A DNA stretch of 64,000 bases, from contig OU015567.1 in the NCBI GenBank assembly GCA_907165135.1, positions 11,780,001 to 11,844,000 on the forward strand. Direction: 5' to 3'. The translations under genes and the position numbers were made by a program. Source of the stretch: Oikopleura dioica. Lineage: Eukaryota > Animalia > Chordata. Below are positions 36,909 through 42,637 of this stretch, one piece after another. How positions within the stretch are numbered: position 1 is the stretch's first letter; the number at the start of each line of letters is the position of its first letter. The notes below the pieces were generated by a model. It made no database searches, was not told the DNA's origin, and saw only the letters and a list, made by a program, of their open reading frames with translations.

Positions 36909-37053
36909 AGCTTTGCGCAGTGGCAGTATCGTAAACGATGAGGTTTATCCGAGTTGCGATTATTGCTAATTGAAAACTATACCCAATACCCCGCCATGCG
37001 GACGTGAAATACCGTCCACATAGGCAATTTCTGAAGGAGGCTACGGTCTCCTC
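36909..37053 (+). ncRNA. RNU4: U4 spliceosomal snRNA
   Basis: AGCTTTGCGCAGTGGCAGTATCG...TGAGGTTTATCCGAG...GCGATTATTGCTAATTGAAAACT...CCCAATACCCCGCC matches metazoan U4. Compensatory stem changes, Sm site AATTTCTGA and a 3' hairpin are present. Confidence 0.95.
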
Positions 37054-37463
37054 GTAATAACGAAGATTTTGAACAGCCAAAATGGTGCAAAAAATCTGCC
37101 AACATCAACCCTAAAAATTTTCATGATGATCGTATGAACGAAGACGCCCAAATGAAACTTTATATTTGCGGAATCCTGCAAGTTTTATCAGAAGTAAGAA
37201 TACAAATTGGATAACTATCCAATACACTTGTATTCTGTGATCGAATATATTTAAAAGATCTTTATTGCATTAAAATATCTGTTACACAAATTTCATTCGG
37301 TAGTTGCTCGACAGCAACTGAAGCTCCAGGTTTTCGGACAGTGTTGCGGATTTCAGTTATTTAAATTTTCAGTCGATAGTATTTACAGAAGAGCAAAAAG
37401 AGAACGAAAATTTTGAATGGGCACGGTGAAAAAAGAGGATGAATTATGCTGAAGGACTTATGC

Positions 37464-38446
37464 TTAGTCGATGACGATCACGTCGTCGTTTTTCTTTTTC
37501 TTCGGTGGATTTTGAAGTGGCTGTGGCTTGTCCTCTTCGTCGGAGTCGATTATAATCGCTTGGGTTTGAACTAAAATCACAATTGACCATATTTGACAGC
37601 GTTTCTATTTATTACCTGGTCGAACGCGTTTTGGGCTAGGTGGGGCAGCTTGCTCAGGTTTTTTCTCCGCCTTTGCTGGGGGTTGCAGTGCCCCGGCACG
37701 AGCATTTTTGCGCGCTAGAACTTGAAGTAAACATATGTTTTAAGATGCTTGTCTACCTGGAAATTGAGGAAGATTTCGAACAAGCGGAAGTCTCGCCAAT
37801 TTAGCTTTTCTATCTTCCTTGATTTTCTCGACTTCCGCAGTGTTGTCTGGGTAAGATTTCTTTGGAGGTTTCTTAGAAGGGCCTGCTGATTTGTTGCTAT
37901 CTTCTTTGTCAAGGATCTCGCCAAGTGCTTCTGGGAAATATTCGTGGAAGTCTTTGAAGTTCTTCTTATTCCACTCTCCTGATGCATCAGCGAGCTTCTG
38001 TCGTTTCTCATTGGACTCTAGCATGCTTCCGATCCCCACTGACTCCTCGGCCATAAATGAGGAGATGCCATTGATGATCGTTCGTGGGCCCCACATCGGC
38101 GACCACGTTTCTGGGTGGTAGCTTGAAATCGACAGACACAGCTTTCTACCGGTAGCTAGTCGACCGTTTGGCGTCATCATATAGATTTCTGGGCCTTTGA
38201 AGGGGTAGTCTTTTGGAAACATGAGGTGGCCAACGTAATAACCGCGTTCGTAAGGAGTGTCTTTTGGGCCTAAACGCTATCTTTTCTGACGAAAATTCTT
38301 ATAAATTAACCTTTGATACAGTACCACCATTTCATGAGATTGGCCGGATCAGGCTTTGCCCATTGTCCTGGTGTAGGATCGTTTTCCATATCTATCAGGT
38401 CTTGTTTCAGACGTTTTACGGCCATAGGACTCGGTCCAACCGACAT
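37464..38446 (-). CDS. UBE2J-like: Ubc6/UBE2J-family ubiquitin-conjugating E2 lacking the C-terminal TM anchor, copy A (4 exons)
   Basis: GPKDTPYERGYY.G.L.FPKDYPFKGP, TPNGRL, KLCLSISSYHPETW (catalytic Cys). Spliced tail ends ...IIIDSDEE...PPKKKKNDDVIVID*. Confidence 0.88.
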
Positions 38447-38701
38447 TTTCACCCTTTTCGATTTTGCTAGTACCCCTTGAATAGAATTTAATTCATTGCA
38501 AGTTAGTTTAATTGTATTGACAGTTAACTTGAGTAGTACATATATTTTTTTGTATCTGTAGATTGAGCAGTTGCTTTCAGCATTTTTATGACAGCGTTTG
38601 GTAGCGAATTATGATTCAGATTATAGTGGAAAATGAAAATAAAAAAGTCAAAAACGAGTGTAATAGCGGTAGGTTTCTATAGAGAGGTAGTTGACTTTTT
38701 C

Positions 38702-39620
38702 TCAGTCGATGATAACGACATCGTCGTTTTTCAGCTTCTTTGGTGCATCTCGTCGAGCTCCAGGTTCATCGTCGTCGGAGAGGATTATCGGGTCGTCAAC
38801 CGCTAAGATACAGTTAGATTATAGGACAAACCGTTTCATTTTACCTGGGCGGACACGCTTAGCGACAACCACGGCTGCTGACTTCTGCTTCTCCTTTTTT
38901 GCTTGAGCTAAAATGCATGCACTTTAATTTCATAATTTATTGCTAATTGCAACCTTGAGCTTGAGGGAGTCTTCGAACAACAGGGTCTCTCGCCGGCTTA
39001 CCAGCTGTATTGCTCGGCTTTACAGGTTTGACCGGCTTCTTTGAAGGACCTGCGTCATTATTTTCACCTTGTTTGTCTAGAATCGCGGCCATCGCTTCCG
39101 GAAAATACTCTTGAAATTCTGGCAACTTTTTGATGTTCCATGATCCAGATTCCTCTGCGAATTTCTCCCGGTGTTGCTTTGACATTTTGAGGGAGCCATG
39201 TCCGTTCGATTCTTCCGCCATAAAAGACCGGATACCGTTGATGATAGTCCGCGGGCCCCAAAGAGGGGACCATGTTTCAGGGTGCCAGCCGCAGATAGTC
39301 AAGCAAAGCTTTGTGTCTAGGGCTAATCGGCCATTGGGCGTTCTCATGTAGATATCTGGTCCCTTGAAGGGATATTCTTTCGGAAAGATGAGATATCCAA
39401 CATAGAAGCCGCGTTTGTAGTCCGTATCCTCAGGCCCTAAAATTCATTTGGTCGTATTCGAATCTCAAATGAGGATGAACGAACCTTGGATACAGTAATG
39501 CCATTTCAAGATATTTGCTGGGTCTGGCTTTGCCCATTGCCCCGGAGTGGGTTCGCTCTGCATTTCAAGAAAGTCCTTTTGGAGTCTTTTCACTGCCATT
39601 TGATTGTGACCCTGCGACAT
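38702..39620 (-). CDS. UBE2J-like: Ubc6/UBE2J-family E2 lacking the C-terminal TM anchor, copy B (4 exons)
   Basis: FPKEYPFKGP, TPNGRL, KLCLTICGWHPETW. Spliced tail ends ...PIILSDDDE...PKKLKNDDVVIID*. Confidence 0.88.
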
Positions 39621-40030
39621 TTCGACCCTTTACGATTTTCTCACTGAATGAATGCAAATGAAAAAGAGGTTTCAATTTTTAATCATTTATTTTGTTCATT
39701 TTTGCTGGGCAATTATGCGTCACCATATATATTTCATATTTATCTCGCTTTGTACAGATTTAAAATCGTAAATTCGACAAATGTGCAATGCTGGGAGGGC
39801 TTCCAGCTGTTTTAAGGCATTTTCCAGTTTGGAAGAGGGGTTTTGAATTGAAGCTGACATAAGCTAGTTTTTGTGTACAAGAAGAAATTCGCAGAATAAA
39901 ATATAGAATGCATTGAGATTTCTTATATTCTGAACTTTTTCGGACACTCGAGGTTAGTTGTGGCTCTCATTTGAGAACAGTTAGGATTAAGTTATTCTAG
40001 CAGTGGAAATCGCGAGAGCTTGGTTCTCGT

Positions 40031-42637
40031 CTATGTCTCCACGGTATCAACATTTGGATATTTCTTTCTCATCCGCGCAACATCGTCACGGAAAAGAAGC
40101 GGGTCAAATCGAACCTCTGTATCTATCAGCGGCACAGTTCCATACTCGTCGACAAAGAAGTTCATACACTGCTGACGCTCCGTAAAATGCGCGTTATTCT
40201 CCCACCGACTCGCGAGCTTCCCAACGACGGGCTGAGGCTCGGTCGAGTCGGTTTTTGTCATGTATTGCTTCTTTTGAGTAACTTTGACAGGTGGCTGGCC
40301 GGATATGTCGGAAACCATGAAGTTCATTAAGATGTCCTCGCAGTTGCTGTAGTCATTTACTTTCTTTAGCATGGTGGATGGAAGACTTTGGAACAGGTGG
40401 AAGTAGTACTTGTGAATGATAGCAGCGCCAGTAAGAACGATGCTGTAATGATTGCCCCATTGCGAAGTATATCGCCACGGAGTCGTCTTGCTTGAAGACC
40501 GATTGTAATGTCTCTGAAGATTGGTTATCTACTGACGGGATGTAAACAACTTACCCGCGACGGAAAGCCAACAATGCGCTCTGGAAACGATAACCAGGTG
40601 GAGAATGCAAAAGCTATTTCTTCTGGATGCAAGGAAACATCGTTATCGAGAGACAAGACGGCATCATACTCAATTTGATCGTAGGGGAAGAGTCTGTTCG
40701 ACACTTTTAGTTCATCTTCTCTTAGCAGCAAAAAACTTTTCCCCTTCGGGGGAGGAGGCCAGCGGGAATCGACTGGTGGAGGATGTTCGCAAGCCCAAAG
40801 GACGATTACTTGCCCGCTATAAGTCATAAAATGGAGGCAAAATGAAAACAATCTTACCAAGATTCAGTTTTCCAAAGATTTTTGATCAGCTTGATAATAG
40901 GCGCGGCGGAAGAAGGCACAGTCTGTACGGTGTGAATAAGGGCAGTGAATTTTGTATCGAGCGAGTGCTCCTTCTTCTCAATGTAAAACGGTGTATTGCT
41001 TGGGCGTAGATTTGGAACTAAACTGAGCGCGCCGGGTGTCGAGTTCCAGACGAATTGGGGCGCACTTGCTTCAGGAAAGATGCGCTGACGGATGATCTCC
41101 AGTGTCGTTTTAACAATCTGGTCGACGGAACTGAAATAAGTACTGTACAAATTGGCTCCTTCTTGGCGCATTCTGAGCACGTTGGCTGGGGAGACGTCCT
41201 CCAGGTGCTGTCCAAGCTCCAGTAGAAGTTTTTCGTCCCAGTTGATTGTGGAGCGCTCCCAGTCAATGACTTCACTAGAATTTCGTTGATATATGATTGA
41301 CGTAGAAAGTTTAGACCTGAATGGAAGAACCCAATCATCGGCTAAAACAACAGGGACACAAGCTTGCTGAAGCGTTTCGATAAAGCGGAAGCTTCCCAAT
41401 CTTCGACCTCTGGGAACGAGACAGAACGTGGAATTTTTGAGTAGTGAGATGTAATCCCACCGATCGTACTCTTCGTTATCAGCGGCACATTTATCGAGGC
41501 ATTCTCGATTAGGGCAGAGTTTCTCCCAATCTTTTCCGTGACGGCAAGTTGTCAGCATTACGCTTCTCGAGCCATCGTGGAGGTGATAAAGAGAGTTACG
41601 AGTAACTGAGCCGATTCCATTGAGATATCGCTTTCCTAAAAGGCTTGTTATAAATTTGTGATCAAATCTTTTGTCCCAGAATGATAGGGATTGTAGGTCA
41701 AGGGTGTTGCCGGGCAAATAAATCACCGTCAGACGTAGTTAAGATAAGTTTTTTGTTTACCTTTGAACGACATGAGATGCGCGCCGAAAGAAGGCCACTT
41801 TGCAATTGCGCTCTCGGCGTAGTGCTTTCCCTTGGCGGGGTGGGTCTCGCCCCAGAGCGGCAACGACACGTCAAATCCACTGCGGTACTTCTGATACGAA
41901 ATCGACGCCTTGGCTAGCATCGCGTGCCCAAGGTCAAACCCGAGGTCCTCGAGATAATCTGGCCAGGTGCCAGAGTACAGGTTGAAGACGAGGTGGTTCT
42001 CTCCATTGTTCCACGTCGGTATTTGGGACAGTCGCCCAGCGAAGTTTTTTACGTAGCGTTCTTTCGATAGAGGATCTCGGTCAATCGAATCCACAGATAA
42101 GACTAATAATTTAATAACAATGTTCGAATTAGCTAATTGCACATACTCTTTATACAGGCTTCACTGATATTTTCTGTGTAATAAGGCGTCCGTTTAATCG
42201 AGTTCAATATCTTCAGGTAGTTAGCCGAGAGCGTGCCGTATTCTTCTTTACGTGGATAAATGTAAACCTTGAAACCGTGCTTTTTACAATTTGCGTCGTT
42301 GAAGCAGTTTTCCATGCGGCACTGGCGCGAGTCCAGCACGCGATTCACCGTTTCCACCTCGTCAAAAGCTCCGACACCATTTTCCTCTGAATAAACTGAT
42401 GATTTAACAATTTATTGCCAGTGAAATACCATCGTCGTAGGAAATATTAGGCTCATTGTAGTCGCGTGAGCGCCGTTTCCGGTGGTTTTCGCCGTGTTCA
42501 TCGTTGGATAAAGCGTACTGGGCCTGATGGTTGATGTAGAGAATCACTAAAAGTTGATTGAGTCGGGAGTAGGAAAACTGTTACTTACACAAAAAGATAG
42601 CAACACATGCAAGTCCATAGCGCTTTATACAACGCAT
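40031..42637 (-). CDS. EXT1: Exostosin-1 heparan sulfate polymerase, multi-exon
   Basis: CRMENCF...FKVYIYP, NLYSGTWPDY, TTCRHGKDW, FCLVPRGRRLGSFRF, NCEDILMNF, KVTQKKQY and DPLLFRD...RKKY. These are EXT1 rather than EXT2 signatures. Confidence 0.95.

What the first reader, a model, noticed from the sequence alone, without database searches (positions are those of the whole stretch)
37464..39620. Tandem Ubc6/UBE2J E2 pair with the membrane anchor replaced by a basic, double SIM-like tail: candidate SUMO-directed ubiquitin-conjugating enzymes
Seen: both paralogues keep the Ubc6-type core (TPNGR, catalytic Cys in KLCL-x-I-x-x-x-HPETW), but their spliced tails are Lys/Pro/Asp-rich with no hydrophobic helix. 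The tails have diverged, yet both keep two hydrophobic-acidic blocks (A: IIIDSDEE and DDVIVID*; B: IILSDDDE and DDVVIID*) around a basic patch (PPKKKK / PKKLK). These final exons (37464-37570, 38702-38792) are missed by the ORF track. Known: Ubc6/UBE2J1/J2 are ER tail-anchored ERAD E2s; [VI]-x-[VI]-[VI] cores flanked by acids are SUMO-interacting motifs; SUMO-targeted ubiquitination normally uses SIM-bearing E3s such as RNF4. Inference: an ERAD E2 has been rewired into a soluble, probably nuclear E2 that reads SUMO directly.
Basis: partly seen in the sequence, partly recalled or inferred. Interest (0 to 1): 0.8.

Follow-up and report, generated by a model that had tools for sequence, protein, structure and literature searches.

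The report
Two soluble E2s with SUMO-binding-like tails
Two neighbouring genes of the tunicate Oikopleura encode ubiquitin-conjugating enzymes of the normally membrane-anchored Ubc6/UBE2J2 type, but the anchor is replaced by a conserved disordered tail that looks built to enter the nucleus and grip SUMO-tagged proteins; the same design recurs in some yeasts, Rozella and nematodes, and I found no description of it.

Summary
On the minus strand lie two intact four-exon genes with GT-AG introns of 42-48 nt. Gene A is 284 aa and gene B is 260 aa. Their cores are Ubc6/UBE2J2-type E2 domains; the best solved relative is human UBE2J2 (7.7e-34). Neither tail has a membrane helix.

Both tails end in the same conserved module:
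- KRVRP;
- a three-residue hydrophobic run followed by Ser/Asp/Glu;
- a Lys patch;
- a four-residue hydrophobic core plus Asp at the C-terminus.

A metatranscriptome contig confirms the last two introns and the terminal exon of A. Two trans-spliced cDNAs from sister lineages, one of them ending in poly(A), encode the same tail. The module is about three times more constrained than the linker before it.

New here: this is not a larvacean one-off. Among 48 anchor-less Ubc6-like cluster representatives, 11 end in the same kind of block, against 0.09 expected by shuffling. They include proteins of Yarrowia, Wickerhamomyces, Cyberlindnera, Rozella and several nematodes. Anchored relatives lack such blocks.

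SUMO binding is untested, so the mechanism is inference. I found no paper describing a ubiquitin E2 with its own SUMO-interacting motifs. I class it as a new variant of a known kind, of moderate to high interest.

The parts
39485..39620 (-). Gene B exon 1 (start codon at 39620)
   Evidence: in-frame model with a GT donor. One search lists the ORF.
38954..39436 (-). Gene B exon 2: most of the UBC core. TPNGRL lies at 39324-39341. The active site KLCLTICGWHPETW lies at 39270-39311.
   Evidence: UQ_con, 2.3e-07..
38845..38907 (-). Gene B exon 3, ending in KRVRP (38846-38860)
   Evidence: AG acceptor and GT donor, phase 1.
38702..38802 (-). Gene B terminal exon. PIILSDDDE lies at 38765-38791, PKKLK at 38729-38743 and DDVVIID plus the stop at 38702-38725.
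   Evidence: There is no transcript evidence for this gene.
38311..38446 (-). Gene A exon 1 (start codon at 38446)
37757..38269 (-). Gene A exon 2: UBC core and the start of the linker. TPNGRL lies at 38157-38174. The active site KLCLSISSYHPETW lies at 38103-38144.
   Evidence: UQ_con, 2.7e-09. UBE2J2, 7.7e-34; metatranscriptome contigs cover 37757-38050.
37616..37714 (-). Gene A exon 3, ending in KRVRP (37617-37631)
   Evidence: the joints 37714|37757 and 37570|37616 are both present in one RNA contig.
37464..37570 (-). Gene A terminal exon. IIIDSDEE lies at 37533-37556, PPKKKK at 37491-37508 and DDVIVID plus the stop at 37464-37487.
37261..37463 (-). Gene A 3'UTR, seen in RNA down to 37366, with an AATAAA at 37261-37266
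   Evidence: the contig piece 37366-37570 is unbroken; position of the poly(A) signal.

Best explanation
Shown. Two tandem, intact paralogues encode soluble ubiquitin-conjugating enzymes of the Ubc6/UBE2J2 (J2) family. The catalytic domain is a complete UBC fold with the J2-type active site: G-R loop, Cys, the three-residue insertion and the general-base His. In place of the tail anchor that ties J2 enzymes to the ER and nuclear membrane, each protein has a disordered tail of about 95-120 residues. The last 40 or so residues form a conserved module: KRVRP; a hydrophobic run followed by a Ser/Asp/Glu stretch; a Lys patch; and a four-residue hydrophobic core plus Asp at the very C-terminus.

Inferred. 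The two basic elements act as nuclear import signals. The two hydrophobic-acidic blocks act as SUMO-interacting motifs. The first would be of the parallel type, with a CK2-like Ser that could be phosphorylated. The second would be of the antiparallel type, with the free carboxylate adding to the acidic flank. A ubiquitin-charged E2 would then be held by avidity on multi- or poly-SUMOylated proteins and would ubiquitinate them or their SUMO chains, with a RING E3 or with less dependence on one. In that sense it would be an E2-level counterpart of SUMO-targeted ubiquitin ligases.

Because the Thr-flap threonines are replaced, its reactivity profile may differ from that of the Ser/Thr-modifying ERAD enzymes.

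Gene B is the faster-evolving copy, with further changes at the active site: S89T, S91C, D92G and Y93W. It may have a modified or regulatory role.
For: Gene models and family:
- The gene models are clean.
- Both cores match UQ_con, and UBE2J2 and Ubc6 are the best solved relatives, aligned without gaps through the active site.
- Cys87, His94, Trp98 and the G-R loop are kept.

No anchor:
- The hydropathy maximum is 0.94, against 1.91 in an anchored relative.
- An AlphaFold2 model of the orthologue P0003 gives residues 1-175 pLDDT above 95. The tail has pLDDT 49-66 and no helix.

Transcripts:
- One marine metatranscriptome contig joins 37826-37757, 37714-37616 and 37570-37366 with a single mismatch.
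- The cDNA contigs L001 and L002 begin with the 3' part of the O. dioica spliced leader, and L001 ends in poly(A). Both encode the same tail.

Constraint:
- The non-synonymous difference (pN) is 0.15-0.29 in the terminal module, 0.44-0.59 in the linker and 0.09-0.21 in the core, with synonymous sites saturated.

Fit to the SIM definition:
- The published definition is an hXhh or hhXh core of I/V/L flanked by acidic residues or phospho-Ser. Parallel SIMs carry the acidic patch C-terminal to the core and antiparallel SIMs carry it N-terminal. The Daxx SIM IIVLSDSD is an example (PMC8616421; PMC12751080).

Recurrence:
- 11 of 48 anchor-less representatives end in such a core plus one or two acidic residues, against 0.09 expected from shuffles.
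- SIM-like blocks number 1.45 per 100 aa in those tails, against 0.17 in the linkers of 62 anchored relatives. Nine of 13 tails have two or more blocks, against 0 of 62.
- Named examples are listed.
Against: - No binding, localisation or activity data exist.
- SIM-like patterns are degenerate and often not functional (PMC8616421).
- Block 1 has only three consecutive hydrophobic residues and misses the strict hXhh/hhXh pattern.
- The three bulk oligo-dT RNA runs of the same species label gave no reads on either gene at 90% likeness, although they covered the neighbouring gene. Expression is therefore low or restricted.
- Gene B has no transcript support at all.
- The Thr-flap residues needed for full J2 activity in yeast Ubc6 are replaced, so activity cannot be assumed.
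- A minor isoform with a different end cannot be excluded.
Confidence: 0.5

Rival explanations
1. The conserved hydrophobic-acidic blocks are docking motifs for a partner other than SUMO. Candidates are a TPR 'carboxylate-clamp' protein such as a CHIP-like U-box ligase, which could read the terminal hydrophobic-Asp-COOH end; another ubiquitin-like fold; or a dedicated E3. The tail would then recruit the E2 to that partner.
For: - The terminal block sits exactly at the C-terminus and ends in Asp or Glu in almost every lineage. That suits a reader of free C-termini.
- The Hsp70 C-terminal TVEEVD is cited as both a TPR-type end and a SUMO binder (PMC8616421), so the two kinds of reader overlap.
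- Other E2 tails, such as the Cdc34 acidic tail, bind their E3. This last point is from my own knowledge.
Against: - The internal blocks (IIIDSDEE, PIILSDDDE, VIDLDDS and similar) cannot be read as free C-termini, yet they co-occur with the terminal block in 9 of 13 lineage representatives.
- Their form, a hydrophobic core plus a Ser/acidic run, is that of validated SIMs such as the Daxx SIM.
- The AlphaFold2 model shows no docking of the tail onto the E2 itself.
Confidence: 0.15
2. The tail is only a nuclear or solubility tail. The basic patches import a de-anchored E2 into the nucleus, and the hydrophobic-acidic blocks have no specific binding role.
For: KRVRP and the K-rich patch fit the classical K-K/R-x-K/R import pattern (own knowledge). 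They are the most invariant residues of the module.
Against: - The hydrophobic blocks are as conserved as the basic ones, at saturated synonymous divergence.
- Such blocks recur in unrelated tails of yeasts, Rozella and nematodes far above the shuffle expectation.
Confidence: 0.12
3. The soluble tail is one isoform or a mis-model. The main product uses another terminal exon that encodes a membrane helix, so the enzymes are ordinary ERAD E2s.
For: - Hydrophobic reading frames exist downstream. An example is 37227-37111 on the minus strand, with an 18-residue hydropathy mean of 2.15.
- Gene B has no RNA support.
Against: - Those frames lie in T-rich 3'UTR, or beyond the AATAAA at 37266 and next to the U4 gene. 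They are not conserved in the related locus L003.
- The RNA contig runs unbroken from the terminal exon into the 3'UTR.
- Two full-length trans-spliced cDNAs of sister lineages, one of them ending in poly(A), end with the SIM-like tail.
- The terminal exon is under purifying selection.
Confidence: 0.04
4. One or both genes are catalytically weakened E2-like proteins. The Thr-flap is lost in both, and B also has substitutions at the active site. They would act as non-catalytic adaptors or inhibitors that bind SUMOylated proteins or E3s.
For: - T121/T122 are replaced by G-I in A and G-H in B, and E119 by S.
- B also has S89T, S91C, D92G and Y93W.
- In yeast Ubc6, S89A abolishes activity, and the T121A, T122A and E119A mutants are severely impaired in RING-stimulated serine discharge (PMC11649903).
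Against: - Cys87 and His94 are invariant, and the core is under strong purifying selection: pN is 0.09-0.10 for A against its orthologues.
- Many relatives, including anchored ones such as P0016, also lack the two threonines.
Confidence: 0.12

Closest known systems
[quoted passage not shown]
   Same: - UBC fold and best sequence match (2f4w 7.7e-34, 9en5 1.9e-30).
- A G-R loop in place of the HPN loop.
- The catalytic Cys, the three-residue insertion and the general-base His.
   Different: - No C-terminal membrane helix.
- The Thr-flap threonines and E119 are replaced, and F80 is Leu.
- The tail carries basic and SIM-like blocks that the linkers of 62 anchored relatives lack.
- Orthology to animal UBE2J2 is unresolved: the larvacean clade sits on a long branch outside the clade that holds Musca UBE2J2.
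SUMO-targeted ubiquitin ligases (RNF4, Slx5-Slx8, RNF111)
   Same: The proposed logic is the same: several SIM-like blocks in a disordered region, joined to ubiquitination machinery, read multi- or poly-SUMO by avidity (PMC12751080).
   Different: - These proteins are E2s. Pfam finds only UQ_con and no RING.
- There are two blocks about 20 residues apart, not four closely spaced ones.
- No biochemical evidence exists.
Daxx C-terminal phospho-SIM (IIVLSDSD) and the PML-type parallel SIMs
   Same: - A hydrophobic core directly followed by a Ser/Asp run that CK2 can phosphorylate.
- The Daxx motif lies at the very C-terminus of the protein (own knowledge).
- B's PIILSDDDE and A's IIIDSDEE have the same form.
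   Different: - The protein context is different.
- A's block has three rather than four hydrophobic residues.
- Phosphorylation is not known.
Anchor-less Ubc6-like E2s of Yarrowia, Wickerhamomyces, Cyberlindnera, Rozella and rhabditid and strongylid nematodes. They are annotated only as 'E2 6', 'E2 J2' or hypothetical.
   Same: - A J2-type core, no anchor, and a tail with one to four SIM-like blocks that ends in a hydrophobic core plus Asp or Glu.
- Yarrowia, Rozella and W. ciferrii also share the order of SIM-like block, Lys patch and terminal block.
   Different: - The tails are not alignable with the larvacean ones: a tail-only search found only P0002 and P0003.
- On the tree the trait needs at least 3 and up to 9 changes. 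Convergence is therefore likely, but a single old origin is not excluded.
UBE2K / Ubc1 (E2 with a C-terminal UBA domain)
   Same: An E2 that carries its own reader of a ubiquitin-family modifier on a C-terminal extension (own knowledge; E2 review PMC4822130).
   Different: Here it would be short linear motifs for SUMO.

Membership tests
J2 family E2 (Ubc6/UBE2J2) | UBC (UQ_con) fold | tested here: met
   - Pfam UQ_con matches on exon 2 of A and B and on the orthologue P0003.
- The AlphaFold2 model of P0003 has residues 1-175 at pLDDT above 95, with UBC-like secondary structure.
J2 family E2 (Ubc6/UBE2J2) | Short GRF loop in place of the HPN loop (Arg79) | tested here: met
   G78 and R79 are present in A and B. 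F80 is Leu in the whole larvacean clade. The definition is from PMC11649903.
J2 family E2 (Ubc6/UBE2J2) | Catalytic Cys followed by the invariable three-residue insertion with the conserved His (His94), and Ser89 | tested here: met
   - Cys87, His94 and Trp98 are present in both genes.
- The spacing is identical to human UBE2J2, with a gap-free alignment.
- Ser89 is kept in A and is Thr in B.
J2 family E2 (Ubc6/UBE2J2) | Thr-flap (E119, T121, T122), conserved only in J2 homologues | tested here: not met
   A has S-V-G-I and B has S-N-G-H at positions 119-122. Several other relatives, anchored or not, also lack the threonines.
J2 family E2 (Ubc6/UBE2J2) | C-terminal transmembrane tail anchor | tested here: not met
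   - The highest 19-residue hydropathy in the tails is 0.94 or less, against 1.91 in the anchored P0012.
- AlphaFold2 predicts no helix in the tail.
- No conserved alternative exon was found.
SUMO-interacting motif (SIM) | Four-residue core hXhh or hhXh of I/V/L, with at least three hydrophobic residues | tested here: met
   - The terminal blocks VIVI (A) and VVII (B) fit fully.
- The internal blocks III and IIL fit only the 'three of four' definition (PMC8616421, PMC12751080).
SUMO-interacting motif (SIM) | Acidic or phosphorylatable flank on one side of the core | tested here: met
   - DSDEE and SDDDE follow block 1.
- DD precedes block 2, and Asp-COOH follows it.
SUMO-interacting motif (SIM) | Lies in an accessible, disordered region | tested here: met
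   The tail has pLDDT 49-66 and no secondary structure in the model of P0003.
SUMO-interacting motif (SIM) | Binds the SIM groove of SUMO, and mutation of the core abolishes binding | not testable with these tools
   This needs a pull-down, ITC or NMR, or at least a complex prediction with the species' SUMO.
SUMO-targeted ubiquitin ligase (STUbL) | RING (E3) domain joined to SIMs | tested here: not met
   Only UQ_con was found in the exon pieces and in full-length P0003. The proteins are E2s, not E3s.

The most novel reading that the evidence does not exclude
SIM-tailed, anchor-less Ubc6/UBE2J2 paralogues would be an undescribed and recurrent class of 'SUMO-reading' ubiquitin E2s. The class would have arisen at least three times, in larvaceans, in nematodes and in yeasts plus Rozella, each time by exchanging the membrane anchor for a module of SIM, Lys patch and C-terminal SIM. 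These enzymes would bring ubiquitin directly to SUMOylated nuclear proteins, in parallel with or instead of RNF4-type ligases.
Probability: 0.35. Interest if true: 0.8.

Novelty: new variant of a known kind. Interest (0 to 1): 0.62.

Why it matters
Crosstalk between SUMO and ubiquitin is currently explained at the level of E3 ligases that carry SIMs. If an E2 carries its own SIMs, substrate choice would be moved to the conjugating enzyme. The J2 family also has unusual Ser/Thr reactivity, which in that case might extend to SUMOylated nuclear proteins.

The recurrence of the same tail design in distant eukaryotes gives several tractable systems for a direct test. Yarrowia and other yeasts, and Pristionchus among the nematodes, are genetically accessible (own knowledge). 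For Oikopleura it adds a lineage-specific duplicated pair whose expression appears restricted.

Tried and rejected
- Alternative terminal exon with a membrane helix. All minus-strand frames from 37050 to 39700 were scanned. The hydrophobic frames found lie in T-rich 3'UTRs or after the poly(A) signal, and they are not conserved in L003. Rejected.
- Origin of the tail by exon capture. A word search with the tail alone (P0003 residues 170-269) found only P0002 and P0003. No donor was identified.
- RNA support in the species' own raw reads. Runs X7-X9 gave zero reads on either gene.
- Timing of the duplication. B branches outside A plus P0002/P0003 (support 91, 84/86). The AU test does not reject A and B together (p = 0.41). 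Synonymous sites are saturated. The related loci L003 and L004 hold only one E2 gene next to the GT64 gene; L003 also shows U4 downstream of it. Unresolved.
- Orthology to animal UBE2J2 is unresolved because of the long branch.
- A membrane-anchored UBE2J or an RNF4 gene elsewhere in this genome. No tool searches this genome as a whole, and word look-ups in earlier notes found nothing relevant.
- Literature. Five searches of open-access papers and preprints on the motif and this E2 family, plus two reviews, gave no ubiquitin E2 with SIMs. Subscription journals were not covered.
- Redundancy control. Single-linkage clustering at 60% chained too many proteins together. It was replaced by the 50%-cluster representatives.
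Full report
**Anatomy**

The minus strand between 39620 and 37464 holds two head-to-tail genes. Each has four exons, GT-AG introns of 42-48 nt and all introns in phase 1.

- Gene B, upstream: exons 39620-39485, 39436-38954, 38907-38845 and 38802-38702, giving 260 aa.
- Gene A: exons 38446-38311, 38269-37757, 37714-37616 and 37570-37464, giving 284 aa.

A GT64 glycosyltransferase gene lies upstream (40031-40372 minus, Pfam 6.6e-24). A U4 snRNA gene lies downstream (36909-37049 plus, 119 bits). The tiny introns fit earlier notes of this scan that name the genome Oikopleura dioica, and cDNAs of close relatives carry that species' spliced leader.

**Family**

Exon 2 of each gene matches Pfam UQ_con. 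The best solved relatives are human UBE2J2 (2f4w, 7.7e-34) and yeast Ubc6 (9en5, 1.9e-30). The next E2 family follows only at about 1e-07, and the alignment is gap-free through the active site.

I mapped both genes onto yeast Ubc6 (P0186) using the J2 signature residues defined in PMC11649903.

- Kept in both genes: G78-R79, Cys87, His94 and Trp98.
- Changed in the whole larvacean clade: F80 to Leu, R85 to Lys, and D92 to Ser (Gly in B).
- Replaced: the Thr-flap threonines T121/T122 become G-I in A and G-H in B, and E119 becomes Ser.
- Additional changes in B: S89T, S91C and Y93W.

The core is a J2-type active site, but one J2-specific element is not conserved.

**The tail**

Neither tail has a hydrophobic segment. 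The highest 19-residue Kyte-Doolittle mean is 0.94, against 1.91 in the anchored relative P0012. An AlphaFold2 model was built on 116 aligned sequences with the orthologue P0003 as target (84% identical to A over the first 183 aligned columns). It gives residues 1-175 pLDDT above 95. Residues 176-269 have pLDDT 49-66 and no secondary structure.

A, B and two orthologues were aligned. The linker is poorly conserved, but the last 40 or so residues share four blocks:

- KRVRP;
- a three-residue I/V/L run followed by Ser/Asp/Glu;
- P-K-K-x-K-N-D;
- a four-residue I/V core plus a terminal Asp.

Coordinates are given.

**Is the tail really made?**

- One contig of a marine metatranscriptome (374 nt, one mismatch) joins 37826-37757, 37714-37616 and 37570-37366. 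These are exactly the last two introns and the terminal exon of A, running on into the 3'UTR.
- Two transcript-sized Logan contigs from related lineages, L001 and L002, encode full-length proteins P0003 and P0002. These are 68% and 67% identical to A overall. The contigs start with the 3' part of the O. dioica spliced leader, and L001 ends in poly(A). Both proteins end with the same module.
- The three bulk oligo-dT runs with the same species label gave no read on either gene. They did cover the end of the upstream gene at 95-99% likeness. Expression in those samples is therefore very low.
- Gene B has no RNA evidence. Its intact frame, preserved splice sites and low non-synonymous divergence in the core (pN 0.20 at pS 0.81 against A) argue that it is functional.

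**Constraint**

Nei-Gojobori counts give pN of 0.15-0.29 in the terminal module, 0.44-0.59 in the linker and 0.09-0.21 in the core. Synonymous differences are saturated, at 0.56-0.81. The L001-L002 pair of close sister lineages is left out of these ranges. The blocks are encoded by different codons in different lineages. The module is under purifying selection.

**Alternative ends**

Hydrophobic reading frames exist downstream, for example at 37227-37111. They lie in T-rich 3'UTR or beyond the AATAAA at 37266, next to the U4 gene, and are not conserved in the related locus L003. I do not take them for exons.

**History of the pair**

The related genomic loci L003 and L004 carry the GT64 gene followed by a single E2 gene. 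L003 also carries U4 downstream of that E2. The duplication is therefore absent from, or lost in, those lineages.

A and B are saturated at synonymous sites. B branches outside A plus the orthologues, but a tree holding A and B together is not rejected (AU p = 0.41). B is the faster-evolving copy, with an end branch of 0.39 against 0.08.

**The wider picture**

A full HMMER search of 1.84 billion cluster representatives with P0003, followed by a profile word search, showed that many anchor-less Ubc6-like E2s end in the same kind of block.

Named cases:

- Yarrowia lipolytica 'E2 6' and two other Yarrowia species: VIDLDDS, a run of Lys, then EPILLD at the end.
- Wickerhamomyces ciferrii, W. mucosus and W. 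pijperi.
- Cyberlindnera jadinii and C. fabianii.
- Rozella allomycis.
- The nematodes Caenorhabditis auriculariae, Oesophagostomum, Ancylostoma, Necator and Pristionchus.

In W. mucosus the SIM-tailed gene (WICMUC_003580) lies on the same contig as a second Ubc6-like gene (WICMUC_003577), three locus tags away. I take that second gene for the anchored copy but did not check its tail on its own.

Counts:

- Among 48 anchor-less representatives of 50%-identity clusters with tails of 30 aa or more, 11 end in a hydrophobic core followed by one or two acidic residues. Shuffled tails give 0.09, with a maximum of 2 in 2000 shuffles.
- SIM-like blocks number 1.45 per 100 residues in these tails. The figure is 0.17 in the linkers of 62 anchored relatives and 0.24 in other anchor-less tails.
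- Nine of 13 such tails have two or more blocks, against 0 of 62 anchored relatives.

On a 141-row tree the trait needs 9 changes, and well-supported branches force at least 3. The tails are not alignable between phyla. Convergence is the more likely reading, but these counts are not phylogenetically independent, and a single old origin is not excluded.

**Mechanism**

Published definitions describe a SIM as a four-residue core, hXhh or hhXh with h being I, V or L and at least three hydrophobic residues. One side carries an acidic or phospho-Ser flank: C-terminal of the core in parallel SIMs and N-terminal in antiparallel ones. CK2 commonly phosphorylates such serines, and the Daxx SIM IIVLSDSD is the textbook example (PMC8616421; PMC12751080).

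Block 2 (DD-VIVI-D and DD-VVII-D) fits fully, as an antiparallel type. Block 1 (III-DSDEE and IIL-SDDDE) fits the looser three-of-four definition, as a parallel, phospho-regulated type. KRVRP and the Lys patch fit the classical basic import pattern (own knowledge).

My best reading, at about even odds, is a soluble nuclear J2-type E2. Its tail would hold the ubiquitin-charged enzyme on multi- or poly-SUMOylated proteins. Every step after 'soluble, conserved tail module' is inference.

The rivals are:

- a different partner for the terminal hydrophobic-Asp-COOH end, for example a TPR clamp;
- a pure import tail;
- a catalytically weakened adaptor, given the lost Thr-flap and B's active-site changes;
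- a missed anchor isoform, which is unlikely.

**Novelty**

The E2 review PMC4822130, the 2025 SIM review PMC12751080 and five full-text searches on the motif and this E2 family gave no ubiquitin E2 with its own SIMs and no description of anchor-less SIM-tailed Ubc6 paralogues. The library does not cover subscription journals. I class the finding as a new variant of a known kind.

**Limits**

- I could not search this genome for an anchored UBE2J copy or for RNF4-type ligases.
- I could not predict a complex with SUMO.
- I could not examine further RNA runs.
- The spliced proteins of the window could not be handed to the remote tools by reference, so P0003 stood in for A in the structure prediction and the large search.

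Noticed in passing
window 36909-37049 (+): A complete U4 spliceosomal snRNA gene (RF00015, 119 bits, E 8.6e-28) lies directly downstream of gene A. It is 98% identical over 157 nt to a stretch of the related metagenome locus L003 (2997-3153), where it also follows the single E2 gene.
   Followed up: partly
window 40031-40372 (-): The last coding part of a GT64 (EXT/EXTL-type) glycosyltransferase gene (Pfam PF09258, 6.6e-24) lies upstream of gene B. The order GT64 then E2 is conserved in L003 and L004. Bulk RNA reads of the species cover its 3' end (39699-39750) but not the E2 genes.
   Followed up: partly
window 38447-38475 and 39621-39650 (-): The about 25 nt before the two start codons are nearly identical between A and B (AAAATCG-A/T-AAAGGGT...ATGTCG). 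Each stretch is preceded by a possible trans-splice acceptor (ttcaag / ttcag). The duplication therefore included the 5'UTR.
   Followed up: no
proteins P0201, P0228, P0241 (labelled 'Asgard group archaeon' MAG) and P0188 (Candida maltosa): These anchor-less Ubc6-like E2s end in CIIM or CLIM, a CaaX-like prenylation box. That would be a third way, besides a membrane helix or a SIM-like tail, to finish this family's C-terminus. The 'Asgard' label on a typical eukaryotic J2 E2 looks like contamination of the bin.
   Followed up: no
L005 (ENA contig ptg000037l), 1682-2614 and 6001-8025: An unidentified eukaryote carries several intronless Ubc6-like UBC domains close together. They include a 674-aa product (P0013) with two UBC domains separated by a Pro/Ser/Thr-rich repeat-like spacer.
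   Followed up: no
proteins P0015, P0176, P0192, P0019, P0041, P0128, P0172: Several of the tails end in E-V-I-E-L or E-V-E-V-I-E-L. This resembles the SUMO1-specific 'SOB' motifs ESEVEVIHV and DSEVEIVTV of DPP9 and RNF111 quoted in PMC12751080.
   Followed up: no
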